This document shows positions 30,275-43,187 of a stretch of DNA of 64,000 bases, one piece after another. The notes under the pieces are model-generated. The model was not told the origin of the DNA. It made no database searches and worked only from the letters and a program-made list of their open reading frames with translations. The stretch spans positions 1 to 64,000 of the IMG/VR virus record IMGVR_UViG_3300046003_007892; one strand, 5' to 3'. Position 1 is the first letter of the stretch. Every line of letters starts with the position of its first letter. The position numbers and the translations under genes were made by a program.

Positions 30275-30313
30275 ACGAGACCATTATCTCGTATCCCGAA
30301 CATGTCAACTATT

Positions 30314-30835
30314 TTAGCGCGCCCAACAGGCGTCCACGAAGGCAACGTCATCAGCCATCAAGGGTTTCTGGTCCTCGCCGAGCGGGATAGCTCGAACTTG
30401 AACGGGACCCATGAACCTCTGGACGGCAGCCGCGATCTTGGCGGTCATGGCTTCCAGGGGTTCGCCATACTGCTCCTGAACGGCCAGCCGAATGTCGTCA
30501 TCCGACATCCCCTCGTAGTCACCGTCCGTCATCCAAATCTCGCCGTAGCAATGCGTGCGGGACATCTGGAGCCGGTAGGCTTCGTTGTGGATGTCGAGAC
30601 CGGCGTGATCGCAAATGACGTCATGGGCAAGACAGCACCCGTCGCCGATGACGATCTGACCGTCTTTCATCAGAACGCCAGCGGCGCCCTGTGGATATCG
30701 GGCATTCCATTCCGCCTTGGTCGGCGCGAGGCAGATGACGGTCTTGCGATTATCACCGGGATTCAGGATTCGGTCCTGGTACACGATAGCCTCGCCAAGG
30801 ATACTCTCGACGATGATGTCAGCGTAGGTTTTCAT
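30314..30835 (-). CDS. Putative internal head protein
   Basis: MKTYADIIVES N-terminus, near-identical to that of 18922. Confidence 0.65.
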   Translation of the reverse strand: MKTYADIIVESILGEAIVYQDRILNPGDNRKTVICLAPTKAEWNARYPQGAAGVLMKDGQIVIGDGCCLAHDVICDHAGLDIHNEAYRLQMSRTHCYGEIWMTDGDYEGMSDDDIRLAVQEQYGEPLEAMTAKIAAAVQRFMGPVQVRAIPLGEDQKPLMADDVAFVDACWAR

Positions 30836-31692
30836 TTATTGGCCACGATGTGCTCGACGAAAGAAGTTATATGGGGCTTGAGCGGAGTCCCCAGTACCCA
30901 AGAAGCGAAGCAGTCGGCCCAGAACTCACCAAAGTTGTTTCTCGAATAGTCTCTCGGGAATGCGCCGGGGTCATTTTGAAGACACCAGTTGTATCGGTCG
31001 TTCAGGTGCACTCGGCAACCAGGGAAGCGGTACTCAAAACGATGGCCGAATTCGTGAATGATAGCGTGGATAAGGAACGGGTCGTTGGTGCTCGGCACAA
31101 GCCAAACATTATCTCCGGCGTAGTCGTAGTAACCGCCAACGCCGTGCCGGGTATGCTTGACACTAACGTCAACCGACATGAGCCAGCCCACCCCCTTGGC
31201 CTCCATGTAGCGACGCGCCGCATTGAAGCATCGCACCATCGCGTTTTTGTACGACTCGGAAATGCCATCACCATAGAAGATTATCTTAGTCTGACCAACG
31301 TCCACGGTCTCGACTTCTACGTTTGGGTCATTCGGGTCCAGGTCATTGAAGTAATCTGTGCCCTTAACGTATGGGAAGTTTACGGCCGGACGGTTCTTGC
31401 CTCCACGGCTCGTGATCTCGCGTCCCGCGCTATTCTGACCAGTGTTCTGACCAGTGTTCTGACCAACGTTGGAATAGTTTGAACCGCCATATTCTACGCC
31501 GTTGACAGTGACTGACCCCAACGCGCCGATAGATATGTTTACTCCGCCAACCTGGAACGATTGAACACTGCTTTCGCCACCAGTATGAGCGTATTCATTG
31601 AGGTGCTCGTCTGTGCAACAGCTACAACGAATTTCCGGTGCCTGGGACGTTTCGACGATGGCTAGGGATTTTCGTATATCGGAGTTGTCCAT
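30832..31692 (-). CDS. Putative packaged zinc metallopeptidase (lethal-factor-like fold)
   Basis: IIHEFGHRFE...YSRNNFGEFWADCF; TAAATA 31697-31702, 4 nt before ATG. Confidence 0.7.
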   Translation of the reverse strand: MDNSDIRKSLAIVETSQAPEIRCSCCTDEHLNEYAHTGGESSVQSFQVGGVNISIGALGSVTVNGVEYGGSNYSNVGQNTGQNTGQNSAGREITSRGGKNRPAVNFPYVKGTDYFNDLDPNDPNVEVETVDVGQTKIIFYGDGISESYKNAMVRCFNAARRYMEAKGVGWLMSVDVSVKHTRHGVGGYYDYAGDNVWLVPSTNDPFLIHAIIHEFGHRFEYRFPGCRVHLNDRYNWCLQNDPGAFPRDYSRNNFGEFWADCFASWVLGTPLKPHITSFVEHIVANK

Positions 31693-31696
31693 CCGA

Positions 31697-31723
31697 TATT
31701 TATCACGGCTTGGTGGCTAAATA
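31697..31723. promoter_or_regulatory. Divergent late promoters TAAATA
   Basis: Each 4 nt before ATG (31692 minus, 31728 plus). Confidence 0.7.
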
Positions 31724-31727
31724 TTCG

Positions 31728-32324
31728 ATGCGAGAGTTCCTCAACATCCTGGCCGAAAACAGAGCCCAACCCTTTCCTGGTCTCACCCCGGAGTTCCTCG
31801 CCAAGCTGCGCGAGATTCGACACCAGTGCCGCATCGACAACGGCGGGGGCGGGTCATGCCACCTCGTCTCGGAATGGCTCGATGACGAATACGGATGGGA
31901 CCGTGTCAGCGGCACCTACACGTCCGCCGACTATCAGGACGTCGCTATCACGGGCCACCTCTGGAACCTCTTGCCCGATAACAGCATACTCGATGCAACG
32001 GCCGATCAGACCGGCGAGGGGCACGACATCCGAGTCATCCACCCCTCTGACCCCGAGTACCATCGCTATCGCCCCGAGTGGTATCCAGATTTCCATCCCG
32101 ATCACGAGGATTTCGAGAAATTTTGGGCTGAATATCAGCCGCTCAGTTTCCCCCACTACGACGGGAGCAAATATCCGAAGTTTTCTGGCGAGGACGACTA
32201 CACGGGTCAGAACCGTCTGCGGGACGAGCGCGGTGACTATTGGTGGTCAACCGACAAGGAACAACTGGCTCGCTATCACGACGAGCAGCAGCGCGAATAC
32301 GATTGGAAGCGCGGACAGTTCTAG
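31728..32324 (+). CDS. Putative packaged papain/transglutaminase-fold protein
   Basis: MREFLNILAE; GGSCHLVSEWL, GHLWN, ILDATADQ triad pattern. Confidence 0.6.
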   Translation: MREFLNILAENRAQPFPGLTPEFLAKLREIRHQCRIDNGGGGSCHLVSEWLDDEYGWDRVSGTYTSADYQDVAITGHLWNLLPDNSILDATADQTGEGHDIRVIHPSDPEYHRYRPEWYPDFHPDHEDFEKFWAEYQPLSFPHYDGSKYPKFSGEDDYTGQNRLRDERGDYWWSTDKEQLARYHDEQQREYDWKRGQF

Positions 32325-32782
32325 TAGTAGTCGTACCCGCTGCCACCGCTGCTGTTGTTCGATTCCCTCATCGAGCCCCTGACCAGCGCGATGAGCCACA
32401 TGACAATCCAACCCGCGACGTAGGCGACAAAGGTCGCGACGAGCCCCGCGAAAAACCATCCCCAGAATTTCGGATAGATGGTCACGAGTCGAATGAACCC
32501 GACGATTGCGCCGATCACCACGGCTCCGACGACGGGAGCCATGAGGTTTAGTCGCCCCCATTTACCCTCGTCACCGGAATCGACAATGAAGTCGGCGAAG
32601 CGGGCGACCGGATTGACGAACGGTTGTTTGGGCTCTGGTTCCTCGACCACGGCGGGCGGCTGGAAGTTATCGTCCATCGAAACCATCGACGTGGGGGCAG
32701 GCTCAGCGACAATGACGTCCCGACCACGTTCATCCTTGGAGAAGACGAACCCTTCTTGCTTGCGCGATGCTTTTCCCATCAC
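32321..32782 (-). CDS. Membrane protein
   Basis: Two hydrophobic C-terminal helices. Confidence 0.7.
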   Translation of the reverse strand: MMGKASRKQEGFVFSKDERGRDVIVAEPAPTSMVSMDDNFQPPAVVEEPEPKQPFVNPVARFADFIVDSGDEGKWGRLNLMAPVVGAVVIGAIVGFIRLVTIYPKFWGWFFAGLVATFVAYVAGWIVMWLIALVRGSMRESNNSSGGSGYDYY

Positions 32783-33169
32783 CTGCCACTATACCGTGCA
32801 GTTTTTTCGGTCAACCGATATCTTCGCGAAACGAAGAACGGCCCCCGAAGGTGCGCACCAACGGAGGCCGTCACAACCGACGCGGACGTGCTGCGGTCAC
32901 CAAGCGGCAGAGATCAGAAGCCTATCCGATCAAGCCCATGACGTGTCTGCAAGAGCGCGCCGCCCCCAACAGAATCCGCCTGATTGTGCATGGAGCCCAC
33001 CAGCCTAAGCGGGCCTCCCTTACGCGGGCAAACAATCCCGTTCCACCTAAGCCCGTTAAAGGCTGACCCTTGAGGATGACCGTAGTCTCCTGTCGGACTG
33101 ACATCTCGCCAGGGCGGTGCTGCAAAACACTTTCGCCGGTCTGGGTGGCCACCCTCGCCGACGAAATAA

Positions 33170-33703
33170 TCAGAGTCCGAGTTCTACTATGGCGGCGTGG
33201 AACTCCGCAATACGTTTCTTGTATGGCTCAAGGGCAATCGTCGGGTAACCGGCCAGTGCCGCCTTGGCGACCTGTTTCTCGGTGAAGAGGCCGACCCAGC
33301 CAAGGAAGTTGAGGTGATCGTATTGTTCTTCCAAGATGCCAAGCTCATAGCCGATATCGAAGAAAGCTTGATCGCCATCGAATGGAAATACCGGATGGCG
33401 GTCTGGAACCTCAACGATATATCGGCAGTCCGACACGTAGATGCCGTCGTTGAAGATCATGCGGAAGACGTCGCGGTCGATTTCGTTGTTGAAAAAGAAC
33501 CGAGCCCCCACCCAGGTGTAGTCTTTACCAAAGACCCATCCGCATAGTTCGTGGGTTTTCGTCCATTCATGGACGGGCTCACGTGTATAGTCGAAATACG
33601 GGTAGCCCATATTTGACAGGAATTGCGCCGCCGTCGAGCCCATGTTTGGGCGGTGGGCTTCCTGAATAGCGGACTTCATTTGCGACAAGGGTGGCAGGCT
33701 CAC
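33170..33703 (-). CDS. Hypothetical protein
   Basis: GTGA overlap start; FFFNNEIDRDVFRM. Confidence 0.6.
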   Translation of the reverse strand: MSLPPLSQMKSAIQEAHRPNMGSTAAQFLSNMGYPYFDYTREPVHEWTKTHELCGWVFGKDYTWVGARFFFNNEIDRDVFRMIFNDGIYVSDCRYIVEVPDRHPVFPFDGDQAFFDIGYELGILEEQYDHLNFLGWVGLFTEKQVAKAALAGYPTIALEPYKKRIAEFHAAIVELGL

Positions 33704-34209
33704 AGCCGACGCCCCCGAAGGTCCATGACCTGATAGCCGAGCAGACTGGCTTTCGCGGCGCATTCTTCCGAACGAATGCCCGCCCAACCGAAATCGTAGT
33801 CGATGACGCTGACCTCGGAACCCAACGCCTTCATGTCATCGTAGAAATCGTCTAGCTCCTGGCCGGTGGGCTCGAACACCCAGCCAGATTTTCGCAGCGG
33901 CGCCGCGAACGGAATATTTTTCCTGATAAGGGGCCCCAGCATAAGGGCCCAACGGTTCTCGAATCGCTCGGCGACCTCCTGGGACTGGAAAAAGAACTCC
34001 GAATTGAACTGGTAGTATCCGGGTTCGAGTTCCTCGGCCGCGCTCATCGCTTGCTGCATTGCCGGGCTCCGCAGCGTGACGACATACCAACCAGCCGCAT
34101 TGAGGGCATGGACCCCCAACTGCCCGCGAAGCCTCGGGGCTATACCGCCCCGCTGCTCCAGGTAGGCATTGATGGCGTCGTTGCCGAATGGAACGGTCGA
34201 GCGGCTCAT
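33700..34209 (-). CDS. Hypothetical protein
   Basis: Coupled ORF. Confidence 0.65.
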   Translation of the reverse strand: MSRSTVPFGNDAINAYLEQRGGIAPRLRGQLGVHALNAAGWYVVTLRSPAMQQAMSAAEELEPGYYQFNSEFFFQSQEVAERFENRWALMLGPLIRKNIPFAAPLRKSGWVFEPTGQELDDFYDDMKALGSEVSVIDYDFGWAGIRSEECAAKASLLGYQVMDLRGRRL

Positions 34210-34502
34210 TTGCCAGCTATGTCGAAGATGGAAATCATTTCGCCTTGGGGGAGATCACGGGTCACGGTGCGATTCAAGACCTCCTCAATGGCCCGTTCCA
34301 TGGCGAAGTTGGTCTCGTAGACGGACGTGCTCCGGTTGGGCTGACCGTCCAGCCATTTCTTGGCTTCGATCAAGACGGCGGTGACGTCGCTCGCGTAGGT
34401 GATGAGGTCATGGATATCCCCGGCCTCTTCGGGCGTCGTGTCCGGGCTCGCGGCGAACCCGGACAGGCGCGCGACCACGGCAGAGATGTCGTTCTTGGCC
34501 AT
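34206..34502 (-). CDS. Hypothetical protein
   Basis: TGATG coupling (MAKNDIS). Confidence 0.6.
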   Translation of the reverse strand: MAKNDISAVVARLSGFAASPDTTPEEAGDIHDLITYASDVTAVLIEAKKWLDGQPNRSTSVYETNFAMERAIEEVLNRTVTRDLPQGEMISIFDIAGK

Positions 34503-34687
34503 CAGGATTTCATCCTCTGTTCGAACGCGTTCAGGTCGGCTTCCAGTTTCGCCATCCGCTCTTCGGACGTCAGCATAGGCGGAACCACAAGATTGGGCTC
34601 GTAGGTTTGTCGCACCCATGGGGACCGGACAGGAGGGCGGTTCTGCGAACGCTTCACCGCGAGGTTCATCATCGCGAGACTGGTCAT
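34502..34687 (-). CDS. Small hypothetical protein
   Basis: Fills operon gap, coupled. Confidence 0.5.
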   Translation of the reverse strand: MTSLAMMNLAVKRSQNRPPVRSPWVRQTYEPNLVVPPMLTSEERMAKLEADLNAFEQRMKS

Positions 34688-34688
34688 G

Positions 34689-35036
34689 TCAGGTATCCAC
34701 GTTGTAGCGGAGTTTGAACTCGACGGCGTCCTTGGCGTCCTCGAAGGCGATCACGTAACGGTCTTCGATCTCGTTACCCAGGTTGTCCTCGGGTTCCAGA
34801 GTCTGATATTCCGCCATGACGAAATCACCCTTGAGGATTTCTTTCGCGTGGAGTTCGCCGATCATCGCCGAGTATCCGCCATGGTAGACGATCACGCCGT
34901 GCACTAGCGTCCAACCGAGGGCCGCCATGTGCAAAACCGCTTGAAGATCGCCGCGCGCCTCGGATAGTTCCCGCACGGCGGTGCGAGTTCTGGCGAGTTC
35001 GTGCTCGCAGTCCGAAAGGGCGGCGGTACGTCTCAT
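34689..35036 (-). CDS. Small protein, FxDxxDAxxFKL family
   Basis: ends AFEDAKDAVEFKLRY; ATGA start. Confidence 0.65.
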   Translation of the reverse strand: MRRTAALSDCEHELARTRTAVRELSEARGDLQAVLHMAALGWTLVHGVIVYHGGYSAMIGELHAKEILKGDFVMAEYQTLEPEDNLGNEIEDRYVIAFEDAKDAVEFKLRYNVDT

Positions 35037-35260
35037 CGCTGACGAATCACAAAGACTTCGGAGGCCGAGTCCTGCCAGACGTAGTAGTGCTCGCCGGGCG
35101 TGTCGCGCATCTTCTCGCGGCCGAACCACTGATAGAGGTCCGTGCCGTCGAAGCGATAGAGCTTCAGTTCCGTCCAGGAGTTCTTCGGCATCTGATTGTA
35201 GGCCGCCTGTTCGAGTTCAGGAACATGAGTGCGGGCGGCGTCTTCGACTTCAGTAAACAT
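35033..35260 (-). CDS. Small hypothetical protein
   Basis: GGAG SD; TTGACG-N16-TATCTC promoter 35282-35309. Confidence 0.6.
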   Translation of the reverse strand: MFTEVEDAARTHVPELEQAAYNQMPKNSWTELKLYRFDGTDLYQWFGREKMRDTPGEHYYVWQDSASEVFVIRQR

Positions 35261-35320
35261 GGGAGTCTCCATTTCACGACAGAGATACCACAAGTTGGTT
35301 TACCGTCAAGTAAATAGGGT

Positions 35321-35884
35321 ATGCGCTACTTCAACATCTTTGAATCAAAATCGGCTCCGCTCTACCACGGAACCGATCTCCTGTTGTTGGCTGCCATCGT
35401 GCAGGGGAACTTTCTCCACAAAGGCATCAACTGGGGGAGGCCTGGGGAACCCAACGGGCCTCGCCTGACCCGCAACTACGGCACGGCATACTCCTTTGCC
35501 AACGACAACGAGTTTGGCATGGGCGGGGTCCTAGTGCTCGACCAGATGAAGATCGCGCAGCGGTATCGCATTCAACCCTACGCCGACGTGGATGCCTCTG
35601 GAGAGCGTTGGGTTAACGAATTTGAAGAGGTGCCGATCACGAGTGAGATCGGCCCGCTGAATCGATATCTGATTTCGATCAATGCTGACCCGGCCCACAT
35701 CCAGACGGTGATGGCGGACGAAGACCTCATGGGGCACCGCTGCGCGGAAGCCAGCCATTGCATTTCGGAAACGTTCGCGACCTACGAGGAGTGCCACGAC
35801 GCCCTCGATCATCTCCTGAAACACCCGATGCTCAACCGGATGGTCCCGCGAGGCCGAGATACGCCGCTGGGTTGGCGGGTCTAA
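35321..35884 (+). CDS. Putative packaged ADP-ribosyltransferase-like protein
   Basis: MRYFNIFES; LYHGT, RLTR, EFEE; TAAATA 35311-35316, 4 nt before ATG. Confidence 0.6.
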   Translation: MRYFNIFESKSAPLYHGTDLLLLAAIVQGNFLHKGINWGRPGEPNGPRLTRNYGTAYSFANDNEFGMGGVLVLDQMKIAQRYRIQPYADVDASGERWVNEFEEVPITSEIGPLNRYLISINADPAHIQTVMADEDLMGHRCAEASHCISETFATYEECHDALDHLLKHPMLNRMVPRGRDTPLGWRV

Positions 35885-35886
35885 TG

Positions 35887-35920
35887 CAAAACGCCCTCCC
35901 GGCCTGACCGGAAGGGCGTC
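35887..35920 (-). terminator. Intrinsic terminator after large ncRNA
   Basis: GACGCCCTTCCGG-TCAGG-CCGGGAGGGCGT-TTTG. Confidence 0.75.
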
Positions 35921-35924
35921 ACCA

Positions 35925-36868
35925 ATGGACACGGCGGGGAGAATCGAACTCCCTGACGGATATGCGTCAGCGTCATTTCGCTCACCAGCCAGGATGCTTA
36001 TCCAGACTGACTTCCACATCCTCGCCGAACGTGAAGAGGGAGGATTCTCACCTCGGCCCCCGGTTTCCAAAACCGGTGCTCTCCGACCGCTCAGGTTTGT
36101 CCTGTGGGGAGTTTCGAACCTCCGTCACCAGCCTCGCCGTTGCGTCCCGTCCCCTTTCTCACGACCCGCGACGTCGCTACACTTCAGTTCCGACTCTGAG
36201 CTACCTCAACCTAGTATGACCGGGGGATTCGAACCCAACCCCGAAAGGCCTTACGACCCCGGTGTCCACCGTGGCGGGCTCGCCATATCCCTTCGCCGCC
36301 CCGCAGCCTAGGGGAGCGACGACCGCAGCCGGTCAATTCCTTATGCCCATTCGGGCAAATTCGCGTGGAAGGCTCGCCCCTTGGTGCCAAGGAACATTCG
36401 AACGCCCACAAACAGACCGCCCTCCGGGAGCCGTTCCCCGCGCGCGGCGGGTCAGATGTCCTACACTGCTGGCGGAACCCTCCTAGCACCGGAGAGAACG
36501 TTCAGCGAATTATCGGAACGGAGCAGTTTAGGCTTACGCGCGCTATCTTGATAGGGAGGCCTGGGGACTCGTATGTTCACCCGAGGTTCTTTAAGGTCCC
36601 CCGCATAGGGGCCCATCCATCCTGTTATCCGTCCTCAACTGAAAGACGGGTGTTCGACGCCCGACTCCCAATACTGTTGCCCGTTCGGGCGAAATGATGC
36701 TGCTCGGGGGACTTGCACCCTTCTCTGGCTTTCTCGGCGGCAGCTTTCCCGCTTCGTCTACCAGAACCTTACACTGACCCCCAGGTTCCCTGAGGCGAGG
36801 CGTCCTATGCCTCCTTACGCTGCTCTCCACCGCATGCGGTTCGGAGCGGCGCGTGCAGCCGACCAACG
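35925..36868 (-). ncRNA. Large (~950 nt) structured ncRNA candidate with several tRNA-like modules (GOLLD/ROOL-like?)
   Basis: Own promoter and terminator, no credible ORF, many hairpins, 5 T-loop-like motifs, 3' T-arm plus CCA. Confidence 0.7.
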
Positions 36869-36873
36869 CCTTC

Positions 36874-36902
36874 TACCTACTCGGGACTGCGTTGCCTGTC
36901 AA
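36874..36902 (-). promoter_or_regulatory. Sigma70-like promoter of the large ncRNA
   Basis: TTTTTGC-TTGACA-N17-TAGGTA. Confidence 0.6.
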
Positions 36903-36919
36903 GCAAAAACTTTCGACCA

Positions 36920-37195
36920 TCAGCAGAACCGCAGGCGATATTTGGCGAGATCGAGATCGCAGTCGAAGCACATGATGAACTGCGACCAGGGCACGACCGG
37001 AGCCATGCTGGGCTTCCACACCGGTCCCGTTTGCACGCCGGGGAGCGCGATGCTGTTCTCGATGCACCAAAGCTGAGCCTCTTTGGTCAAATCAGCAACA
37101 AGGCTGATGACGTCGATGCGCAACCCGTCGTTTTTCTCCAAGAGGACGATACGGCCAGCAACAACCTCGAAGTTGGTGATCATCGAAGCCGTCAT
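36920..37195 (-). CDS. Small protein, FxxxxDxxxY/FxL family
   Basis: ends CFDCDLDLAKYRLRF. Confidence 0.6.
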   Translation of the reverse strand: MTASMITNFEVVAGRIVLLEKNDGLRIDVISLVADLTKEAQLWCIENSIALPGVQTGPVWKPSMAPVVPWSQFIMCFDCDLDLAKYRLRFC

Positions 37196-37521
37196 AGGAA
37201 GAGCATCTGGAACAGGACGGCCTCCGCCGCCGTATTGAAAGAAATCAGGCCAACCTGCGCCGTTTTATACAGATCGGAACCACGATCATTATAACGTTCG
37301 TGCATATTCCGGTCGTTGTAAAGTTTCACGACACAGACATAGGCGGAAAACTGCTCGTTGGCCACGATGAGTTCGTGGACCTCCTTCGCGACGGTGAAGT
37401 CGCGAGAATGCGGAAACCGGCGCAGCTTTGGCGCCAGCGTCACCTCGAAAGGCAGAGGGTAGATGACGTCGCGCAGGAACCCCTTATCCCGCCGCCAGTT
37501 CGCTGACCAGTTGGGGTTCAC
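37192..37521 (-). CDS. Small protein, same C-terminal family
   Basis: ends SFNTAAEAVLFQMLF. Confidence 0.6.
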   Translation of the reverse strand: MNPNWSANWRRDKGFLRDVIYPLPFEVTLAPKLRRFPHSRDFTVAKEVHELIVANEQFSAYVCVVKLYNDRNMHERYNDRGSDLYKTAQVGLISFNTAAEAVLFQMLFL

Positions 37522-37525
37522 GGGT

Positions 37526-37789
37526 TCAGAAACCCCTGCGGATGTCGCGCCGACCGCCCATCACCCGAACGAAGGTCGAGCCCACGAAGGTCAGGATGCA
37601 GAGGAAGAAAACGGCGAAGAAAATGCCGAAGACGATCTCAGGACCCGAATACGGCACCAGGGTTTTCTGACCCGTGCAGACGTTGACGAACTCTCGCCCT
37701 TCCAACAGGGGTCGTTCGATCATGCACGAAGCCTGATTGAGGTTCAGGGTCGAGGACTGGCCATCGACGATGATAGGTGCGGTTTGCAT
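37526..37789 (-). CDS. Small membrane protein
   Basis: IVFGIFFAVFFLCILTFVG helix. Confidence 0.65.
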   Translation of the reverse strand: MQTAPIIVDGQSSTLNLNQASCMIERPLLEGREFVNVCTGQKTLVPYSGPEIVFGIFFAVFFLCILTFVGSTFVRVMGGRRDIRRGF

Positions 37790-37792
37790 GGT

Positions 37793-38140
37793 TCAGGTCT
37801 CCGACGTGTAGGTGATCGTAAGGTAGGACTGGCCGTCGTCGTCATAGACGAGGGCGTGATGGCTCACACACGCGAACCGGAACGTCCGACCCTTGTAGGT
37901 GATTTCGGCCGCCATGAAACCCCGGAGGGCCTCGGCGTTGATGTAGTTCTCGTCCAACGAGACGTAGATGTTCTGATCGTTCGCGATGACGGTGTTGTTC
38001 CGCACCGAAATCGACAGTGCGTCGCCGATCACCTCGGCGTAGGCACCCAAGAGCGACCGGTCGCGAAAACGAGCGAGCGGCATCCGGGCGACCAGGGCGT
38101 CGTAAACGTCATCCACGATGACAGCGTCGAGATTGATCAC
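37793..38140 (-). CDS. Hypothetical protein
   Basis: GTG start just after upstream stop. Confidence 0.6.
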   Translation of the reverse strand: MINLDAVIVDDVYDALVARMPLARFRDRSLLGAYAEVIGDALSISVRNNTVIANDQNIYVSLDENYINAEALRGFMAAEITYKGRTFRFACVSHHALVYDDDGQSYLTITYTSET

Positions 38141-38142
38141 GA

Positions 38143-38529
38143 TCAGGACTCCGGCAGATTGATGAGCTTGTTCAGGATGGGAATCGGCAACGTCCACTGT
38201 CCAATCCAGTGTTCGACCGTGGCCTCCGCCCGGCAGAACGGGATGATGACCAGATGGTTGGAGAAATCATCGGTGTCGAGCAGGCGTTGCAGAATGCGGG
38301 CACGTGTCGCCGGGGTCATCGCGAAATAATCGACGACAATCACGAACTCGCTCGGCGTTTCCTGCGGGTCCCGAAGGCACGCGACGGGCCCGATGGCCCC
38401 CAGGTCAGCGATCATCTCCGGCACGTTCGCGGGCTCGACATTGATAGCCACCGGCCGCCGCATGATCGGCAGGGTGGTGAACTGGGCACCCAGAGCAGAG
38501 AGAAGCGTCAGTTGGGTTTGGGTAAGCAC
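38143..38529 (-). CDS. Hypothetical protein
   Basis: AGGAG SD; TTGACA promoter at 38576-38581. Confidence 0.65.
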   Translation of the reverse strand: MLTQTQLTLLSALGAQFTTLPIMRRPVAINVEPANVPEMIADLGAIGPVACLRDPQETPSEFVIVVDYFAMTPATRARILQRLLDTDDFSNHLVIIPFCRAEATVEHWIGQWTLPIPILNKLINLPES

Positions 38530-38583
38530 GGGTCTCTCCTGTTGAGTTGACCCCTTGTAACCTAATCGCCGAACTTGTCAAGT

Positions 38584-38620
38584 AAAAGAAAACGCCCCCG
38601 GTGAGAACCGAGGGCGTCTT
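38584..38620 (-). terminator. Intrinsic terminator
   Basis: ACGCCCTCGGT-TCTC-ACCGGGGGCGT-TTTCTTTT. Confidence 0.8.
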
Positions 38621-38642
38621 GATGTTCATCCGCTGGGATGCT

Positions 38643-39119
38643 TTAGGGTTTGCGACGGTCGTTGGGGTTACGGTCGAAGTACGGGCTCAAAGCCCCGTCA
38701 GTCGGCGAATACTTGTCGAAATCGAGATGGCCGTCACGACGATACCAAGGACCCATGGAGCAATAGTCCCAAATTTGGGCGGTGGTGTGATTTAGGTCCC
38801 TCGCCATGCCTTTGCACATGTCGAATTCTTGTCGTTGACTGTAACGGCTATTTCCGTCTTCGTCCGTTTCAAAGGCCCGCACCAGCCTGACGAAGTCCGG
38901 GTGGTTCTCGATGTCGGGCATGTAACGGCTGAAGTTGTAACGTTGACCCCAATCGTTGCTGTTGTCTTCGAAATCGTTTCTGAGCGTATCAGCCGAATTC
39001 GGAAACTGATCAGACTGCTTCTTCGTAGTCCGAATGCCAAAGACTTGGTCAGTGCCGAAACCCAAGAATTCGTTCAGCTTGGTTTCCGTGATGATGTTCA
39101 TATATTTGCGAATCGACAT
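38643..39119 (-). CDS. Putative internal head protein
   Basis: MSIRKYMNIITETKLNE; TAAATA 39145-39150. Confidence 0.65.
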   Translation of the reverse strand: MSIRKYMNIITETKLNEFLGFGTDQVFGIRTTKKQSDQFPNSADTLRNDFEDNSNDWGQRYNFSRYMPDIENHPDFVRLVRAFETDEDGNSRYSQRQEFDMCKGMARDLNHTTAQIWDYCSMGPWYRRDGHLDFDKYSPTDGALSPYFDRNPNDRRKP

Positions 39120-39213
39120 AGTCGTGGGCCCTCAAGTTTGATGTTATTTATCAAACTGCGTTCGCTGGCGTGCAAAGGGCGTGGGGACTAGATTTCCTGA
39201 CGCGGCCCCGAAC

Positions 39214-39414
39214 TTACGGAAGGCTGCGTTCATGAAGAGAACGGTCATTGCAACGACGCCGCTTCCCCAACCAGGACCCATCGCCGCAAACACGCCACCT
39301 TTTCCCCTTCTTGCGCTCGTAAAGGAACCGCCCCCGCGCGTTGATCGCGGATGGAACCACCATGACGCCGTCCTTCCAAGAGGAGGCGAATGGGACCCAG
39401 ACCAAATCAATCAT
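39214..39414 (-). CDS. Small hypothetical protein
   Basis: MIDLVWVPF resembles neighbour MMAELVWLPY. Confidence 0.5.
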   Translation of the reverse strand: MIDLVWVPFASSWKDGVMVVPSAINARGRFLYERKKGKRWRVCGDGSWLGKRRRCNDRSLHERSLP

Positions 39415-39628
39415 TGGGGCCGAACTTGAGCATGTATTCAGTATAGCGGGCCACGGTCAGAGACATCTCGACGATATAGGTGGTCGGCTGTCCATGAAGA
39501 CGCGTGATGCGATGATCATGGTAATTGTCGCTGATGAAGGCGGCCCGCTCGTCGGACCTGGGCGGGCACTGCCACCCAAAGGGTACGTGGGAAATGACAT
39601 AGGGGAGCCAGACGAGTTCAGCCATCAC
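39407..39628 (-). CDS. Small hypothetical protein
   Basis: Coupled ORF. Confidence 0.55.
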   Translation of the reverse strand: MMAELVWLPYVISHVPFGWQCPPRSDERAAFISDNYHDHRITRLHGQPTTYIVEMSLTVARYTEYMLKFGPND

Positions 39629-40125
39629 CCAACGGCCAAATAGGTTGCTAGGCCTTTTTCGCGTGCTTGGTCAAAAATAGGTCCTGCTTCGAACGTGATC
39701 TTCAAACAATGCAAACGTGTCGTTTCAATGATTACGTCATGAAACTCCGTCTTGAACATGCCGAATATTTCACCATCAATAGAGACAATAATGTCAACCT
39801 TGTTGAGACGCTCTGAAGAGTATCCCCAATGACTCCCTATACTGAAGGACAAGTGAAATTCTGATATTTCTTCATTATCGAACTTCTCTATGGCTTCCGA
39901 TATCATCAGGTCATTTGGATACCCATTTTCGTCGGACAGATAAAGTCCTGGGAATATCAACGTGATTTCTTTGGATGTCACGCCTAGATAGCGGTCTACT
40001 TCCTGAGTAGGCTTGGTAGTGTTATCCAAACCAATGGCGGCTCCTGGCCTGTATACAGTGGGAGCGGGTAGCTTCGGGTCGAGCTTGGAAATAAGTCTCG
40101 TAAGAAAAGCATCTTCGAGCGTCAA
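39625..40125 (-). CDS. AT-rich hypothetical protein
   Basis: TTGA overlap with HNH stop; 22/60 GC at 39841-39900. Confidence 0.55.
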   Translation of the reverse strand: MTLEDAFLTRLISKLDPKLPAPTVYRPGAAIGLDNTTKPTQEVDRYLGVTSKEITLIFPGLYLSDENGYPNDLMISEAIEKFDNEEISEFHLSFSIGSHWGYSSERLNKVDIIVSIDGEIFGMFKTEFHDVIIETTRLHCLKITFEAGPIFDQAREKGLATYLAVG

Positions 40126-40667
40126 TGAGAAATCTTCTTCCATCTTTTTTTCACGGCCACGTCAGAGCAGCCGAGCATCTCAGCTATCTTAACCATGGAG
40201 AGACGAGACATCAAATTAGGAAGATCGACCGAGTCCCAGTCCACCTTGCCTTTTCGCTGCCCGGCACACGCGACGGAACATGTGATCTGGTGGGCGGGTT
40301 TGGGCCCGGAGCAAATCGGGCACGGCACCGGCTCTTCGGCGTAGAGGGATTTGTAGTCGGCGAACCTCTCGTCGAATGACGGAGGATTCTCCGGTACGTC
40401 CAATATGCCGTCGTGAACTTCCCGGTGGCAGTTCGCGCAGAGGAGAACGCATTTCTTCAACTCGGCCACGATCTTCGGCCAGGACGCTGGATTCCTCCGC
40501 ACCGTTCCCAACGCGAAATCCTTGGCGGTTGGGTCCAGGTGGTGCAGTTCCAATGCAGATACTGTTCGATCATATGAGCAGATCGCACAGCATCCACCCA
40601 TGGCCTCGACGATGCGTTCTTTGGTGCGGCGTCGCCAACTCTTTACCGCTTCTGAGCCTTTGGACAA
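40122..40667 (-). CDS. HNH endonuclease (free-standing) with C-terminal Zn-finger/HTH
   Basis: GGCCAIC...LELHHLDP...KCVLLCANCHREVH; GGAGGT SD before TTG; TAAATA 40701-40706. Confidence 0.85.
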   Translation of the reverse strand: MSKGSEAVKSWRRRTKERIVEAMGGCCAICSYDRTVSALELHHLDPTAKDFALGTVRRNPASWPKIVAELKKCVLLCANCHREVHDGILDVPENPPSFDERFADYKSLYAEEPVPCPICSGPKPAHQITCSVACAGQRKGKVDWDSVDLPNLMSRLSMVKIAEMLGCSDVAVKKRWKKISH

Positions 40668-40740
40668 GAAAAATACCTCCGAGCCGAAGTGGCCCAAAGG
40701 TATTTATCTTCGTGTAATCAAACCTATGACGGTTCGAGAA

Positions 40741-40829
40741 TGGCTCCTAGTTGAGGAATCGAACCTCACTCGTTAGCCTCGCGGCCTACAGGGTAACAAC
40801 CTGCCCGCACACCTTGTGCGTTACTAGGA
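40741..40829 (-). tRNA. tRNA-Asn(GTT) with atypical long variable arm
   Basis: loop TTGTTAC, U1-A72, GGCC-GCGA-GGCT variable hairpin, CCA encoded. Confidence 0.75.
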
Positions 40830-40861
40830 ATAGCGATGCCCCGAAAGGCATCAGAGATAAG

Positions 40862-41173
40862 CTGGGCAGGCAGGGCTCGAACCTGCGACATTTCGATTCG
40901 CTTGTTCCCATGTTCCCATGGGCGCGGACTATATCTTCACCCTCAGCATTACCTGTTAGGGGCTGGGTGCTGTTTGGTCGTTATCGGGTTTGGCTCCCTC
41001 AGACCTAGTCTCTACACCTTCCGAAATACTCAAGGCCTTCTTTCGGCTCGGCTCGGGATTGCCACCGCCATTACGCGAGAGGTTTCCCCGAATTCTCCCA
41101 GATTTTCAACCTCAGTTTCCCGAGGAAGTGTCCATTGAACAGTCGAACGCTCTACCAACTGAGCTACAACCCA
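40862..41173 (-). tRNA. tRNA-Asn(GTT) split by group I intron (exons 41138-41173, 40862-40898), no CCA
   Basis: Exons join to a canonical 73-nt cloverleaf with loop CT-GTT-AA. Confidence 0.9.
40899..41137 (-). mobile_element. Group I intron, 239 nt, no ORF
   Basis: P GAATTCGGGGAAAC, Q AATCCCGAGC, R GTAGAGACTA, S AAGATATAGTCC; P1 with U.G at 5' splice site; terminal G. Confidence 0.92.
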
Positions 41174-41326
41174 GCTTATCTCTGACTTGGCGTCCCCCCT
41201 CCCGCCATCACCTGTTGGTGTCTGCGCGGTCGGAGGAACATGGTTGCCCCCGACCATGAGAAACCTTGCTCTCATGGTCGGGAGGGTTTTCTTGCCCTCC
41301 CCCGTAAAGGGGGTCCGGCACGAAGA

Positions 41327-41557
41327 TTAAACGTCGGTCGCCTTCCTGTGATTCTTGAAATCGCGTCCGCGTTCCTGAATGACGGTTGCGTCGAGTTCGG
41401 TTCCGAAGGCCTCAAGGACCGTCCAACCTCGGCTCCACTTGCCGTCTTCCTTGAGATCAACGAGGCCGTCCTGGATGGCCCGTTCAGACGGAATCCAGGA
41501 GACTTGACGTGCGCCGTTGCGCTCCAGTGTGCATTGTTTTACAGTCTCCCTTCTCAT
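41327..41557 (-). CDS. Small hypothetical protein within tRNA array
   Basis: AAGGA SD, 76 aa. Confidence 0.55.
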   Translation of the reverse strand: MRRETVKQCTLERNGARQVSWIPSERAIQDGLVDLKEDGKWSRGWTVLEAFGTELDATVIQERGRDFKNHRKATDV

Positions 41558-41601
41558 CTGATAGTCCTTTCGTAAGACTTCACCACCATGGTGAAGAATA
41601 G

Positions 41602-41676
41602 TGGAGGCGCAGGGTGGTCTCGAACCACCGACATGCAGAATATGAATCTGCCGCTCTACCCCTGAGCTACTGCGCC
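41602..41676 (-). tRNA. tRNA-Met(CAT), probably elongator (Ile2 not excluded)
   Basis: loop TTCATAT, G1-C72, CCA encoded. Confidence 0.85.
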
Positions 41677-41729
41677 GTATTCCTTTTGCTGCCGCCCCAG
41701 CATCGAAACACTGGGACGGCGGCGAAACT

Positions 41730-41893
41730 TGGTGGACGTGCCAGGAATCGAACCCGGACAGTTGAGTTTCACCCCAACCGCATTACCCGGACGGACCCCG
41801 CCTCTGACTGTCTCCGGGTTCGCGACCCCTCGGACATCCTCGGACGAGGCACTCCGCCTCTATCAAACTCAACGGGTATCCCCGTCTACGCCC
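41730..41893 (-). ncRNA. 164-nt tRNA/tmRNA-like RNA with Ala identity (G3.U70, A73, CCA)
   Basis: GGGCGT/ACGTCC-A-CCA acceptor, T-arm CCGGG-TTCGATT-CCTGG, 8-bp stem enclosing ~95-nt insert. Confidence 0.6.
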
Positions 41894-41898
41894 GTAAA

Positions 41899-41974
41899 TG
41901 GTAGGCCCGGACGGGTTCGAACCGCCGACATTCGGTGTGTAAAACCGACGCTCTCCCAACTGAGCTACAGGCCC
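41899..41974 (-). tRNA. tRNA-Val(TAC)
   Basis: loop TTTACAC, CCA encoded. Confidence 0.92.
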
Positions 41975-42087
41975 TCAGGTCACCCTGAAAATCTCCCAGT
42001 GATTACCCCACCGCTTGGTCGGCAACCTCCGCCGCTGGGAGCGGCCTCTCTGACTGTCGCCATCCTGGCGCCGGTCGTATTCTTGTG

Positions 42088-42164
42088 TGGTCGGCGAAGG
42101 TGGGTTCGAACCACCGACCTTTCGATTATCGGTCGAATGCTCTAACCAACTGAGCTACTCGCCG
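42088..42164 (-). tRNA. tRNA-Ile(GAT)
   Basis: loop CCGATAA (C33), CCA encoded. Confidence 0.88.
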
Positions 42165-42205
42165 TCACACAAACTGAGCTTTGATGCTCCTGACCTCGCC
42201 ACGTC

Positions 42206-42270
42206 TGGCTGTCCGGCGAGGGTTTCGAACCCTCCGCGCCTTGCCTGTCGGCCACCTAGGGACCAGACAG
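42206..42270 (-). ncRNA. 65-nt tRNA mimic lacking an anticodon arm
   Basis: 9-bp CTGTCTGGT/GCCGGACAG stem, T-arm GAGGG-TTCGAAA-CCCTC, CCA. Confidence 0.5.
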
Positions 42271-42345
42271 TCAGGAACATCTCTGCTAAGAACCCTTCCG
42301 CTTCTTCCCTCGCAGCTTACGAGGGCGTCCCCTTGGGATTCGAAA

Positions 42346-42410
42346 TGGCGGGGCGCCCGGATTTGACCCGGAGATCGTTCGCTTCAAGCGGGGCATCGCA
42401 ACCTAGCCCC
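42346..42410 (-). pseudogene. Degenerate tRNA-like element
   Basis: CCA end, T-arm with GTCAAAT loop, truncated D-arm, weak stem around TGA. Confidence 0.4.
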
Positions 42411-42452
42411 TAAGCTTGTGACCTTCCCCCTACGGGGCACACACCGATGAAA

Positions 42453-42527
42453 TGGTAGTCGAGGGTGGGATTGAACCACCGACCTTCGCCTTATCAAGAC
42501 GCTGCTCTCCCGCTGAGCTACTCGACC
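42453..42527 (-). tRNA. tRNA-Ile(GAT)
   Basis: loop TTGATAA, CCA encoded. Confidence 0.88.
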
Positions 42528-42532
42528 GCACG

Positions 42533-42607
42533 TGGTAGGTCTGGAGGGTTTCGCACCCCCGACCTTTGCAATGTCAATGCAACGCTCTCCTCCTGAGCTA
42601 CAGACCC
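42533..42607 (-). tRNA. tRNA-Val(GAC)
   Basis: loop TTGACAT, T-loop TGCGAAA, CCA encoded. Confidence 0.88.
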
Positions 42608-42702
42608 ATACCACATGGAAACTATCCCCCGACGACCCACAGTGCAGGCCGTCTATTCAAGACCCCGAGGGATGGGGTCCCGGAAGCGCGAGGCTTCCGA
42701 AA

Positions 42703-42777
42703 TGGTGGCCACAGGTGGTCTCGAACCACCGACACCCGCATTTTCAGTGCGGTGCTCTACCCCTGAGCTACATGGCC
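42703..42777 (-). tRNA. tRNA-Phe(GAA)
   Basis: loop CTGAAAA, CCA encoded. Confidence 0.92.
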
Positions 42778-42779
42778 GT

Positions 42780-43070: not shown

Positions 43071-43082
43071 ATATGTATTCAC

Positions 43083-43166: not shown

Positions 43167-43187
43167 ATAAGTGAATACATACTGCGT

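What the first reader, a model, noticed from the sequence alone, without database searches (positions are those of the whole stretch)
35887..36902. ~950-nt stand-alone structured ncRNA built from tRNA-like modules
Seen: a sigma70-like promoter (36874-902) and a terminator (35887-920) bracket ~950 nt with no credible ORF. The minus strand has repeated GCCC-GAAY-GGGC hairpins, many short stems, T-loop-like motifs (GGGTGCAAGTCCC, GGGTTCGAATCCC, GGAGGTTCGAAACTCC, GAGGTGAGAATCCTC, GGGAGTTCGATTCTCCC), an embedded Pro(TGG)-like arm CCGGT-TTTGGAA-ACCGG (~36055-80), and a 3' cloverleaf-like end with CCA at 35925. Known: giant ornate RNAs (GOLLD, ROOL) occur in phages near tRNA genes and have unknown function. 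Inference: a GOLLD/ROOL relative or a new class, possibly a multivalent tRNA decoy.
Basis: partly seen in the sequence, partly recalled or inferred. Interest (0 to 1): 0.8.

Follow-up and report, generated by a model that had tools for sequence, protein, structure and literature searches.

The report
Orphan tRNA-operon-like noncoding unit in jumbo phage
A jumbo phage carries a roughly 980-base non-coding transcription unit that looks like a duplicated, largely decayed tRNA operon ending in one well-folded tRNA-like RNA; it is not a relative of the giant GOLLD or ROOL RNAs, and nothing like it was found in any other genome.

Summary
The sequence features are present at the stated coordinates. 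35885-36920 has no coding potential. It lies between a TTGACA-N17-TAGGTA promoter and a strong intrinsic terminator on the minus strand. That promoter type occurs exactly once more in the window, in front of the real tRNA array.

- Rfam gives no GOLLD, ROOL, tmRNA, RNase P or intron hit, even at E<=10.
- Folding energy of the whole region is no better than shuffles.
- No homolog was found in phage GenBank records or IMG/VR. Covariation therefore cannot be tested.
- The nearest relative (83% nt identity in the flanking gene) lacks the region.

What is there:
- Two diverged tandem units of about 525 nt. The first 125 nt are 70% identical (z=5.7).
- Four tightly packed tRNA-derived modules in the 3' 350 nt. 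One resembles a D-armless tRNA-Pro(UGG) (18.4 bits, below the 29-bit threshold).
- Only the last module (35925-36029) looks maintained. It has a canonical T-arm, a 7-pair acceptor stem, an encoded CCA and an exceptionally well-defined fold.

The only polymorphisms among near-identical phage copies are two slippage indels in the unstructured parts.

Best reading: a degenerating tRNA-type operon with one surviving tRNA-like RNA. Interest is modest.

The parts
36875..36902 (-). Promoter P_A: TTGACA, 17-nt spacer, TAGGTA, with an A/T-rich stretch just upstream. Predicted transcription start near 36868.
   Evidence: Exact TTGAC-N18-TAGGT occurs only here and at 43349-43322, in front of the real tRNA array. 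The generic sigma-70 scan did not call it.
36755..36868 (-). Leader copy A: the 5' part of the transcript, and the first copy of the internal duplication.
   Evidence: 36885-36761 aligns to 36355-36240 at 70% identity over 112 columns. Local score is 51, against shuffles of 28.5 +/- 3.9 (max 43), z=5.7. A hairpin is kept in both copies with 1 double and 2 single compensating changes and no broken pair. Its own fold z-score is -0.36.
36708..36720 (-). M1: T-loop-like motif GGG-UGCAAGU-CCC, with a stem of only 3 pairs and no acceptor partner found.
   Evidence: Read directly. It is a paralog of the M2 T-loop (direct repeat D5). The same UGCAAGU loop occurs in an uncalled tRNA-like element of the relative L013.
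36679..36690 (-). Hairpin h1, GCCC-GAAC-GGGC.
   Evidence: One of only two GCCCGAAYGGGC sites in 64 kb (repeat D3).
36410..36460 (-). Decayed copy of the M5 3' end plus terminator (t_A), followed by UGUUUGU. It no longer forms a stable hairpin.
   Evidence: Short matches lie on the same ~520-nt diagonal as the leader duplication: 36428-36418 with 35902-35892, and 36451-36445 with 35938-35932. Fold z=+1.17.
36344..36372 (-). Position equivalent to the promoter in unit B (TTCCAC-N15-TGGGCA). Not a credible promoter. It overlaps hairpin h2, GCCC-GAAU-GGGC (36356-36345).
   Evidence: Alignment of the two units; motif search.
36236..36340 (-). Leader copy B, the second copy of the duplicated 5' segment.
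   Evidence: nhmmer with the two-copy profile finds only these two copies in the window and in the relatives' loci.
36212..36275 (-). M2: a small tRNA-like module with T-loop GGG-UUCGAAU-CCC flanked by ACCGG/CCGGU. It has no CCA.
   Evidence: (weak T-arm hit). Fold z=+0.37.
36097..36211 (-). M3: a degenerate tRNA-like module. Its 5' part resembles the phage's own tRNA 5' halves (GGUUGAG-GU-AGCUCAG...). 58 nt separate it from a T-like hairpin, GGAG-GUUCGAAA-CUCC. It carries the 5-nt deletion polymorphism at 36138-36142.
   Evidence: (T-arm hit at E=0.13). Fold z=+0.40.
36030..36093 (-). M4: a tRNA-Pro(UGG)-like module. It has an intact 5-pair anticodon stem with a 7-nt loop UUUGGAA, a 4-pair T-stem, and an acceptor stem with 6 of 7 pairs. 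There is no D-arm and no CCA.
   Evidence: Rfam tRNA model: 18.4 bits against a threshold of 29. nhmmer with a profile of the phage's own tRNAs: E=9e-4 over 64 kb. Fold z=+0.47.
35925..36029 (-). M5: a well-folded tRNA-like RNA.
- Acceptor stem UUCGGCG/CGCCGUG, with one U-U mismatch.
- A 7-pair stalk carrying two hairpins in place of the D and anticodon arms.
- A canonical T-arm, GGGAG-UUCGAUU-CUCCC.
- Discriminator U and an encoded CCA.
   Evidence: Fold z=-2.75 (2 of 200 shuffles). The MFE structure holds 53% of the ensemble, and only 1 of 3652 windows of 105 nt in the 64 kb exceeds that. T-arm and acceptor geometry. 14 of the phage's 16 tRNAs also encode CCA. The best non-self hit of a model of M5 is a tRNA-Ser(GGA) of relative L013, at 14.4 bits and E=0.21.
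35887..35920 (-). Intrinsic terminator t_B: a 14-pair G+C-rich hairpin followed by UUUU. It is oriented for minus-strand transcripts and abuts the stop codon of the convergent 187-aa gene (35321-35884, plus strand).
   Evidence: -26.5 kcal/mol, z=-4.6.
36138..36142 (.). 5-nt deletion polymorphism (CAACG on the RNA strand), seen in copies from samples 3300042892 and SRR27335584.
36546..36547 (.). 1-nt insertion polymorphism in a GCGCGCG run. It segregates independently of the 5-nt deletion, giving 3 haplotypes.

Best explanation
This is a third tRNA-operon-type transcription unit of a jumbo phage. The phage is distantly related to Sinorhizobium phage Phosso and Agrobacterium phage Atu_ph07.

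Proposed history and mechanism:
1. The unit arose by tandem duplication of a ~525-nt cassette: promoter, leader, tRNA(-like) gene(s), terminator.
2. The two copies then degenerated in complementary ways. The upstream copy kept the promoter and lost its terminator. The downstream copy lost its promoter and kept the terminator. The pair is therefore now read as one ~980-nt RNA.
3. Host sigma-70 RNA polymerase starts near 36868 and stops at the hairpin at 35920-35887.
4. Most of the transcript is relaxed or decaying sequence. This covers the 5' ~590 nt and modules M2-M4, which are tRNA relics lacking a D-arm, a proper T-stem or CCA.
5. The last ~105 nt (M5) is the only part that looks maintained. 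It is a tRNA-like RNA with a 12-pair acceptor/T-arm minihelix and an encoded CCA. RNase P and 3' trimming should release it exactly as they release the phage's tRNAs. It cannot decode, because it has no 7-nt anticodon loop.

What is shown: the non-coding status, the promoter and terminator anatomy, the duplication, the tRNA ancestry of M4, the fold quality of M5, and the absence of homologs in the collections searched.

What is inferred: transcription, processing, and the assignment of parts as decayed or maintained.
For: - Non-coding.
- The promoter is of the same exact type as the one in front of the real tRNA array, and that type occurs nowhere else in the window.
- Strong terminator oriented for the minus strand.
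- Same strand as both tRNA arrays, and located between them.
- Modules are packed 1-6 nt apart, like the phage's own tRNAs.
- tRNA ancestry: M4 scores 18.4 bits on the Rfam tRNA model and E=9e-4 with the phage's own tRNA profile. There are weaker T-arm hits for M2, M3 and M5, and T-loop motif enrichment.
- Internal duplication.
- The decayed terminator copy is no longer a stable hairpin.
- M5 fold quality. M5 encodes CCA like 14 of the 16 real tRNAs.
- M2-M4 and both leader copies fold no better than shuffles.
- The only differences among near-identical phage copies over 8-12 kb are two slippage indels. Both lie in parts without structural signal; none lies in M5, the promoter or the terminator.
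- The closest relative lacks the region. Homology stops at the end of the flanking gene.
- The upstream 91-aa gene is an ORFan.
- Gaps inside the real tRNA array, in relative L013 and in a Klebsiella phage also hold uncalled tRNA-like modules. Such relics are therefore ordinary in phage tRNA islands.
Against: - A 1-kb stretch of useless DNA is unusual in a phage genome. The promoter and terminator are intact, which may mean the whole unit is under selection.
- The MFE z-score test is insensitive here. The group I intron and some real tRNAs of the same window also score near 0. Lack of thermodynamic signal therefore does not prove lack of structure.
- There are candidate long-range pairings. 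One is 14 nt at 93% complementarity between 36702-36689 and 35981-35968. Another is 12 nt between 36268-36257 and 35937-35926.
- A hairpin in the duplicated leader is kept by compensating changes. This hints at constraint outside M5.
- Transcription and processing were not observed.
- M5's boundaries were chosen by me, which flatters its fold statistics.
Confidence: 0.5

Rival explanations
1. It is a precursor of several functional tRNA mimics. The long transcript is cut at its tRNA-like modules into small RNAs, or it acts whole as a multivalent mimic. These would titrate host tRNA-targeting defence nucleases or tRNA-handling enzymes. For example, M4 would offer an intact Pro(UGG) anticodon stem-loop as bait.
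For: - M4 keeps a perfect 5-pair anticodon stem and a canonical 7-nt loop while having lost the D-arm.
- M5 has the full RNase P / CCA-enzyme recognition surface.
- The promoter is of the tRNA-array type, so the unit would be expressed together with the tRNAs.
- Phage tRNAs are known to counter anticodon nucleases and PARIS (PMC10264068, PMC11464382).
Against: - No conservation in any relative or collection.
- M2-M4 fold no better than shuffles.
- M3 tolerates a 5-nt deletion in natural populations.
- No tRNA-repair gene or defence-related gene was recognised among the 20 neighbouring ORFs.
- Known counter-defence uses real, chargeable tRNAs, not armless relics.
Confidence: 0.2
2. It is a single giant ornate RNA of a new class, analogous to GOLLD or ROOL. 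The whole ~980 nt would fold into one elaborate architecture, possibly oligomeric, with embedded tRNA-like elements like the tRNAs sometimes found in the GOLLD linker.
For: - Its size and phage origin match, and it sits between two tRNA islands. GOLLD and ROOL are often near tRNA islands, and GOLLD linkers sometimes hold tRNAs (PMC12286853).
- It has its own promoter and terminator.
- There are two candidate long-range helices.
- The RNA strand is G-rich.
Against: - No hit to any Rfam family, including GOLLD and ROOL, at E<=10.
- The whole-region MFE equals that of shuffles.
- The region is two diverged tandem repeats rather than one integrated design.
- Natural indels are tolerated.
- It is absent from the nearest relative, and no homolog was found anywhere. 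GOLLD and ROOL were defined by wide conservation and covariation.
Confidence: 0.08
3. It is inert spacer DNA or a long 3' UTR. The region would be read only as the tail of the upstream minus-strand gene cluster (36920-40143), or not at all. The promoter match and M5's fold would be leftovers without present function.
For: - No terminator separates the 91-aa gene stop (36920) from the region.
- The -10 element is weak, and the generic scan misses the promoter.
- The region is an orphan and carries indel polymorphisms.
- Several metagenome assemblies break inside it.
Against: - The exact promoter type is shared only with the real tRNA array.
- The terminator is very strong and correctly oriented.
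- M5's fold definition lies in the top 0.03% of windows, and it retains CCA.
Confidence: 0.15
4. It is a protein-coding gene or a pseudogene of one. This could involve frameshifts or readthrough.
For: ORFs of 74-128 aa exist in several frames.
Against: - All have negative codon scores.
- No Pfam or PHROGs match.
- tblastn with the relatives' neighbouring proteins finds nothing convincing.
- Two frame-breaking indels segregate in nature.
- Public gene callers call nothing there.
Confidence: 0.02

Closest known systems
[quoted passage not shown]
   Same: - Encoded with or between tRNA arrays and on the same strand.
- Uses a tRNA-array-type promoter.
- Modules are tRNA-sized and tightly packed.
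- The last product has the tRNA-type acceptor/T-arm and CCA needed for tRNA-style maturation.
- Function unknown.
   Different: - This unit contains no canonical tRNA at all.
- It is ~980 nt long with a 590-nt non-tRNA-like 5' part.
- It shows an internal tandem duplication.
- No sequence similarity to T4 RNAC or RNAD was tested, because no reference sequence was available in the tools.
GOLLD RNA (Rfam RF01998)
   Same: A large (>800 nt) phage-borne non-coding RNA, near tRNA islands, sometimes with tRNAs embedded (PMC12286853).
   Different: - No match to the covariance model, which captures GOLLD's universally conserved 3' domain.
- No conservation and no covariation evidence.
- No thermodynamic signal.
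ROOL RNA (Rfam RF03087)
   Same: A large RNA of phages and prophages, often near tRNA islands (PMC12286853).
   Different: - No match to the model.
- ROOL is about 580 nt with multiple conserved pseudoknots, and none could be established here.
Canonical tRNA (Rfam RF00005), including class II tRNA-Ser
   Same: - M4 aligns over the anticodon and T arms.
- M5 has a canonical T-arm, acceptor stem, discriminator and CCA.
- M5's closest match is a relative's tRNA-Ser(GGA).
   Different: - M4 scores 18.4 bits against a threshold of 29 and lacks a D-arm.
- M5 has no 7-nt anticodon loop and replaces two arms by a stalk with two hairpins.
- ARAGORN calls none of the modules.
tmRNA tRNA-like domain
   Same: In M5, an acceptor stem plus T-arm joins a long helix where the anticodon arm would be, and the molecule ends in CCA.
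   Different: - ARAGORN and Rfam find no tmRNA.
- Position 3-70 is C-G, not the G-U needed for alanine charging.
- There is no plausible tag reading frame.
- Only 55 nt lie inside the stalk.

Membership tests
GOLLD RNA (RF01998) | Match to the family covariance model (conserved 3' domain). | tested here: not met
   No hit at the gathering score on 64 kb. No hit at E<=10 with relaxed filters on 1.6 kb or 0.67 kb.
GOLLD RNA (RF01998) | Encoded in phages or prophages near tRNA islands. | tested here: met
   The genome is a jumbo phage. The unit lies between tRNA arrays at 26644-27291 and 40741-43262.
GOLLD RNA (RF01998) | Elaborate secondary structure supported by covariation across many homologs. 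| not testable with these tools
   No homolog found. Only near-identical copies exist.
ROOL RNA (RF03087) | Match to the family covariance model. | tested here: not met
   no hit.
ROOL / GOLLD | RNA-only homo-oligomeric nanocage. | not testable with these tools
   Needs cryo-EM or native gels (PMC12286853).
tRNA (RF00005) | Score at or above the gathering threshold (29 bits), or an ARAGORN call. | tested here: not met
   The best hit is M4 at 18.4 bits. ARAGORN finds nothing at default settings, and only incoherent calls at 60-90% thresholds.
tRNA (RF00005) | Four-arm cloverleaf with a 7-nt anticodon loop. | tested here: not met
   M4 lacks the D-arm. The M5 loops are 4 and 6 nt. M2 and M3 give no cloverleaf.
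tRNA-like RNA processed as a tRNA | Acceptor stem stacked on a 5-pair T-stem with a 7-nt T-loop, a discriminator base and 3' CCA. | tested here: met
   M5 only: GGGAG-UUCGAUU-CUCCC, then CGCCGUG-U-CCA, pairing with UUCGGCG. Actual processing was not observed.
tmRNA | tRNA-Ala-like acceptor stem (G3-U70), a tag reading frame, and a model or ARAGORN match. | tested here: not met
   Position 3-70 of M5 is C-G.
Group I / group II intron | Match to the intron covariance models. | tested here: not met
   No hit in the region at E<=10. As a positive control, the same scan finds a group I intron at 40906-41155.
Intrinsic (rho-independent) terminator | Stable G+C-rich hairpin followed by a U run on the transcribed strand. 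| tested here: met
   35920-35887, -26.5 kcal/mol, z=-4.6, followed by UUUU. The simple scan did not list it.
Sigma-70-type promoter | -35 and -10 hexamers at 16-18 nt spacing. | tested here: inconclusive
   The -35 is perfect, but the -10 matches only 2 of 6 consensus positions, and the generic scan missed it. The same TTGAC-N18-TAGGT architecture precedes the real tRNA array and occurs nowhere else.

The most novel reading that the evidence does not exclude
The unit is an expressed ~980-nt phage RNA, or its processed products are functional, above all the 105-nt M5 RNA with a tRNA acceptor/T-arm, CCA and a non-tRNA body. It would work as a new kind of tRNA mimic. It would engage a tRNA-binding host factor, such as a tRNA-targeting defence nuclease, a CCA-adding or processing enzyme, or the ribosome, to the phage's advantage. 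It would be a lineage-specific invention made from duplicated tRNA genes.
Probability: 0.1. Interest if true: 0.7.

Novelty: new variant of a known kind. Interest (0 to 1): 0.3.

Why it matters
If the best reading is right, this is a snapshot of how phage tRNA islands turn over. Whole promoter-to-terminator cassettes duplicate and decay in complementary ways. They leave behind tRNA-shaped RNAs that no longer decode. That is useful for annotation, because such units are not genes for giant RNAs and should not be called tRNAs. It also bears on how new tRNA-like regulators might arise.

If instead M5 or the whole transcript is functional, it would add a lineage-specific tRNA mimic to the phage-host conflict over tRNAs. 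At present nothing beyond one phage lineage supports that.

Tried and rejected
1. Rfam at the gathering score and at E<=10 on three nested ranges. Only a sub-threshold tRNA hit appeared; the other hits (atpB, a human lncRNA fragment, FMN, DnaX) are noise.

2. ARAGORN with introns up to 1200 nt, tmRNA mode and lowered thresholds. It gave only mutually overlapping, incoherent calls.

3. The idea of a tRNA split by a large intron. It came from the real intron-bearing tRNA-Asn in the same window. No matching 5' half or acceptor partner was found and there is no intron model hit, so it was rejected.

4. Homolog hunting, all negative:
- blastn against 50,697 phage records at E<=1e-5 and E<=10. The 21-nt hit in Caulobacter phages is a terminator-like hairpin after a tail tube gene.
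- Synteny through the 187-aa neighbour. Its homologs at 57-69% identity and about 90% identity have no such region next to them.
- Synteny through the 91-aa neighbour, which is an ORFan.
- Spurious ORFs of the region used as mismatch-tolerant probes. IMG/VR returned only the same phage.
- The exact 28-mer of the M5 3' end in GTDB genomes gave no hits, so M5 is not an attP-type copy of a host tRNA end.
- A degenerate 18-base pattern from the duplicated leader in IMG/VR. The 12 extra loci are unrelated coding sequences.

5. A covariance model of M5 searched against the window and the relatives' loci, with filters on and off. No second copy was found.

6. A protein-pseudogene origin. tblastn with the relatives' neighbouring proteins found nothing.

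7. Sliding MFE z-scores. These are uninformative, because real tRNAs and the group I intron in the same window also score near 0 unless delimited exactly.

9. I did not fetch the whole Phosso or Atu_ph07 genomes to look for analogous units. At about 40% protein identity a single-sequence model would not recognise them.
Full report
**Context.** The window is the first 64 kb of a 240-kb IMG/VR contig (L002 is identical over 29321-41881). The genome is a jumbo phage. Its 1112-aa baseplate wedge protein is 43% identical to that of Sinorhizobium phage Phosso and 40% identical to that of Agrobacterium phage Atu_ph07. The window holds 16 tRNA genes in two minus-strand arrays, at 26644-27291 and 40741-43262. 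The finding lies between them on the same strand. Nearly all neighbouring genes are ORFans.

**Checking the observation.**
- The 1036 bases between the stop of a 91-aa gene (36920) and the stop of a convergent 187-aa gene (35884) are non-coding. All ORFs inside have negative codon log-likelihoods, while the flanking genes are clearly positive. None hits Pfam or PHROGs. Public gene calls on the two contigs that span the region whole leave it empty.
- The terminator is real and strong: a 14-pair hairpin followed by UUUU, z=-4.6. It is oriented for minus-strand transcripts.
- The promoter has a perfect -35 but a poor -10, and the generic scan missed it. However, the exact architecture TTGAC-N18-TAGGT occurs only twice in 64 kb. 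The second site is at 43349-43322, directly upstream of the real tRNA array, and both sites follow an A/T-rich stretch. I take this as good indirect evidence that the unit is transcribed like the tRNA operon, from about 36868 to 35887. That gives roughly 980 nt.

**Is it a known RNA?** No. Rfam finds the tRNAs and a group I intron elsewhere in the window, but nothing in the region at gathering thresholds. At E<=10 the only meaningful hit is a sub-threshold tRNA match at 36031-36093: 18.4 bits against a threshold of 29. GOLLD, ROOL, tmRNA, RNase P, OLE, raiA and the intron models give nothing. ARAGORN finds nothing credible under any setting.

**Is it conserved?** Not in anything I could reach.
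- blastn against 50,697 phage records gives only T-loop-sized matches or chance matches.
- The convergent 187-aa gene has homologs at 37-69% identity, plus a cluster at about 90%. None of the contigs I could fetch (L003, L004, L005, L013) has the region beside that gene. In the closest one (L013, 83% nt identity), similarity stops exactly at the end of the gene.
- The upstream 91-aa gene has no homolog among 5.8 billion proteins.
- I used the spurious ORFs of the region as mismatch-tolerant probes. IMG/VR returned only the same phage. JGI metagenomes and GTDB genomes returned nothing confirmed.

**Is it structured?**
- The MFE of the whole region is no lower than that of shuffles: z=-0.45 on the minus strand and -1.59 on the plus strand.
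- In sliding 120-nt windows, only the terminator window and the window over 35960-36079 stand out.
- This test is weak in this G+C-rich genome. The group I intron and several real tRNAs also score near zero when not delimited exactly. Delimited real tRNAs score -3.9, -3.1 and -0.25.
- Delimited modules give a clear split. M5 (35925-36029) scores z=-2.75, and its MFE structure holds 53% of the ensemble. Only 1 of 3652 windows of 105 nt in the 64 kb exceeds that value.
- M2, M3, M4 and both leader copies score between 0 and +0.5.

**Anatomy.** The 3' 350 nt are four modules packed 1-6 nt apart, as the phage's real tRNAs are.
- M4 (36093-36030) is recognisably tRNA-derived. A profile of the phage's own tRNAs hits it at E=9e-4. 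It has a perfect anticodon stem and a UUUGGAA loop (anticodon UGG), a 4-pair T-stem and 6 of 7 acceptor pairs. It has no D-arm and no CCA.
- M3 starts like the phage's tRNA 5' halves but has 58 nt before a T-like hairpin.
- M2 is a ~50-nt element around a GGG-UUCGAAU-CCC loop.
- M5 has the only canonical T-arm, a 7-position acceptor stem with one mismatch, a discriminator U and an encoded CCA. 14 of the 16 real tRNAs also encode CCA. Its D and anticodon arms are replaced by a 7-pair stalk bearing two hairpins with 4- and 6-nt loops, so it cannot decode.
- A covariance model of M5 finds, as its best non-self hit, a tRNA-Ser(GGA) of relative L013 (14.4 bits, E=0.21). That suggests, but does not prove, descent from a class II tRNA.
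- The T-loop consensus GTTCRANNC is enriched about tenfold in the region.

The region is an old tandem duplication.
- 36885-36761 (the -10 element plus the first ~110 nt of RNA) aligns with 36355-36240 at 70% identity. The score exceeds all 300 shuffles, z=5.7.
- Short matches on the same ~520-nt diagonal link 36451-36418 to the M5 3' end and terminator at 35938-35892.
- The two T-loops at 36720 and 36236 are paralogs.
- The upstream unit keeps the promoter, while its terminator copy has decayed (z=+1.17). The downstream unit has lost the promoter and keeps the terminator. The result is one long transcription unit.
- One hairpin of the duplicated leader is kept in both copies, with three compensating changes and no broken pair. 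With two sequences this is only a hint.
- No further copy of the leader exists in the window, in the relatives' loci or, by a degenerate pattern, in IMG/VR.

**Population data.**
- Copies of this phage from five or more samples are identical to the window over 8-12 kb, except for two indels. Both are inside the region: a 5-nt deletion at 36138-36142 in M3, and a 1-nt insertion at 36546 in a GC repeat. They occur in three haplotype combinations.
- Both look like replication slippage. Both lie in parts without structural signal. M5, the terminator, the promoter and the duplicated leader are untouched.
- Several assemblies also end inside the region, at 36442, 36673, 36744 and 36781-36789. I cannot explain this without reads.

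**Wider pattern.** The gaps inside the real tRNA array also contain T-arm plus acceptor modules, some with CCA, that no program calls. The array of relative L013 does too. So does a Klebsiella phage array that shares a 22-nt T-arm match with M5. Uncalled tRNA-like relics are thus a normal component of phage tRNA islands. T4's tRNA region likewise yields two small RNAs of unknown role (PMC3014915).

**Conclusion.**
- The interpretation as a GOLLD/ROOL relative fails its one testable defining feature.
- The 'new class of giant structured RNA' has no positive evidence beyond size and location.
- The best-supported account is a duplicated, complementarily degenerated tRNA-type operon. Its last gene, M5, survives as a well-folded, CCA-ended tRNA-like RNA, probably matured by RNase P and 3' trimming. 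The remainder is leader or relic.
- I put this at about 0.5. A functional multi-mimic or decoy precursor is at 0.2, an inert spacer or 3' UTR at 0.15, a novel giant RNA at 0.08, and a coding origin at 0.02.
- The decoy idea draws on real biology: phage tRNAs counter anticodon nucleases and PARIS (PMC10264068, PMC11464382). Nothing here tests it.

Noticed in passing
window 40860-41175 (minus strand): A tRNA-Asn(GUU) gene is split in its anticodon loop by a ~238-nt group I intron. Rfam Intron_gpI scores 50.1 bits at 40906-41155. The exons match the phage tRNA profile at 41171-41136 and 40899-40862. ARAGORN misses this tRNA. An HNH endonuclease gene (40122-40697) lies ~170 nt downstream, outside the intron.
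   Followed up: partly
window 40741-40829 (minus strand): An 89-nt tRNA with selenocysteine-like or 'allo-tRNA'-like geometry but a GUU (Asn) anticodon. It has an 8-pair acceptor stem, a 6-pair D-stem with a 3-nt loop, a long variable arm, a 5-pair T-stem and CCA. It folds cleanly (z=-2.6) and scores 25.5 bits on the tRNA-Sec model. tRNAs with non-canonical acceptor/T-stem geometry (8/4, 9/3) are reported from bacteria and their phages (PMC5389517). It might recode Asn codons.
   Followed up: partly
window 41677-41898, 42165-42452, 42778-43082 (minus strand): The gaps inside the real tRNA array hold at least six extra T-arm plus acceptor modules that no program calls as tRNAs. Their T-arms start at 42979, 42925, 42862, 42372, 42234 and 41757. 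Three end in CCA. One (around 42925) is a bare 41-nt acceptor/T-arm minihelix.
   Followed up: partly
window 43322-43349 (minus strand): The likely promoter of the main tRNA array is TTGACT-N17-TAGGTT after a long A/T-rich stretch. It is the only other exact TTGAC-N18-TAGGT in the window, which suggests a phage- or host-specific -10 variant.
   Followed up: partly
window 36442, 36673, 36744, 36781-36789: Contigs from several independent metagenome assemblies (JGI 3300046002 and 3300042889; Logan SRR35488121 and SRR27335584) end inside the region. Pairs from the same sample overlap by only 9-41 nt. The cause could be local population heterogeneity or coverage loss. It is unexplained without reads.
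   Followed up: partly
window 36689-36702 and 35968-35981: A 14-nt stretch just upstream of hairpin h1 is 93% complementary to the second hairpin inside M5, 707 nt away. About 0.1 such pairs are expected by chance in 1 kb. It could be a long-range pairing or a relic of an inverted duplication.
   Followed up: no
window 36811-36817 (minus strand): A strong Shine-Dalgarno-like AAGGAGG lies in the 5' leader, with no start codon at a usable distance.
   Followed up: no
L013 8550-9344 (minus strand): The tRNA array of the closest relative also contains uncalled tRNA-like genes. One is His(GUG)-like with an odd T-loop (GGCAGAG). Another is a ~90-nt element with a CCGG-UGCAAGU-CCGG T-arm; the same loop is seen at window 36720-36708.
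   Followed up: no
L037 (Klebsiella phage KP13-26, 72950-73040): Between the annotated tRNA-Tyr and tRNA-Asn lies an unannotated tRNA-like module. Its T-arm and first acceptor bases are identical to 22 nt of M5. ARAGORN does not call it.
   Followed up: partly
window 41325-41555 (minus strand): A small ORF (~75 aa) followed by very stable hairpins (z down to -5.8 at 41180-41299) sits inside the tRNA array, between tRNA-Met and the intron-bearing tRNA-Asn.
   Followed up: no
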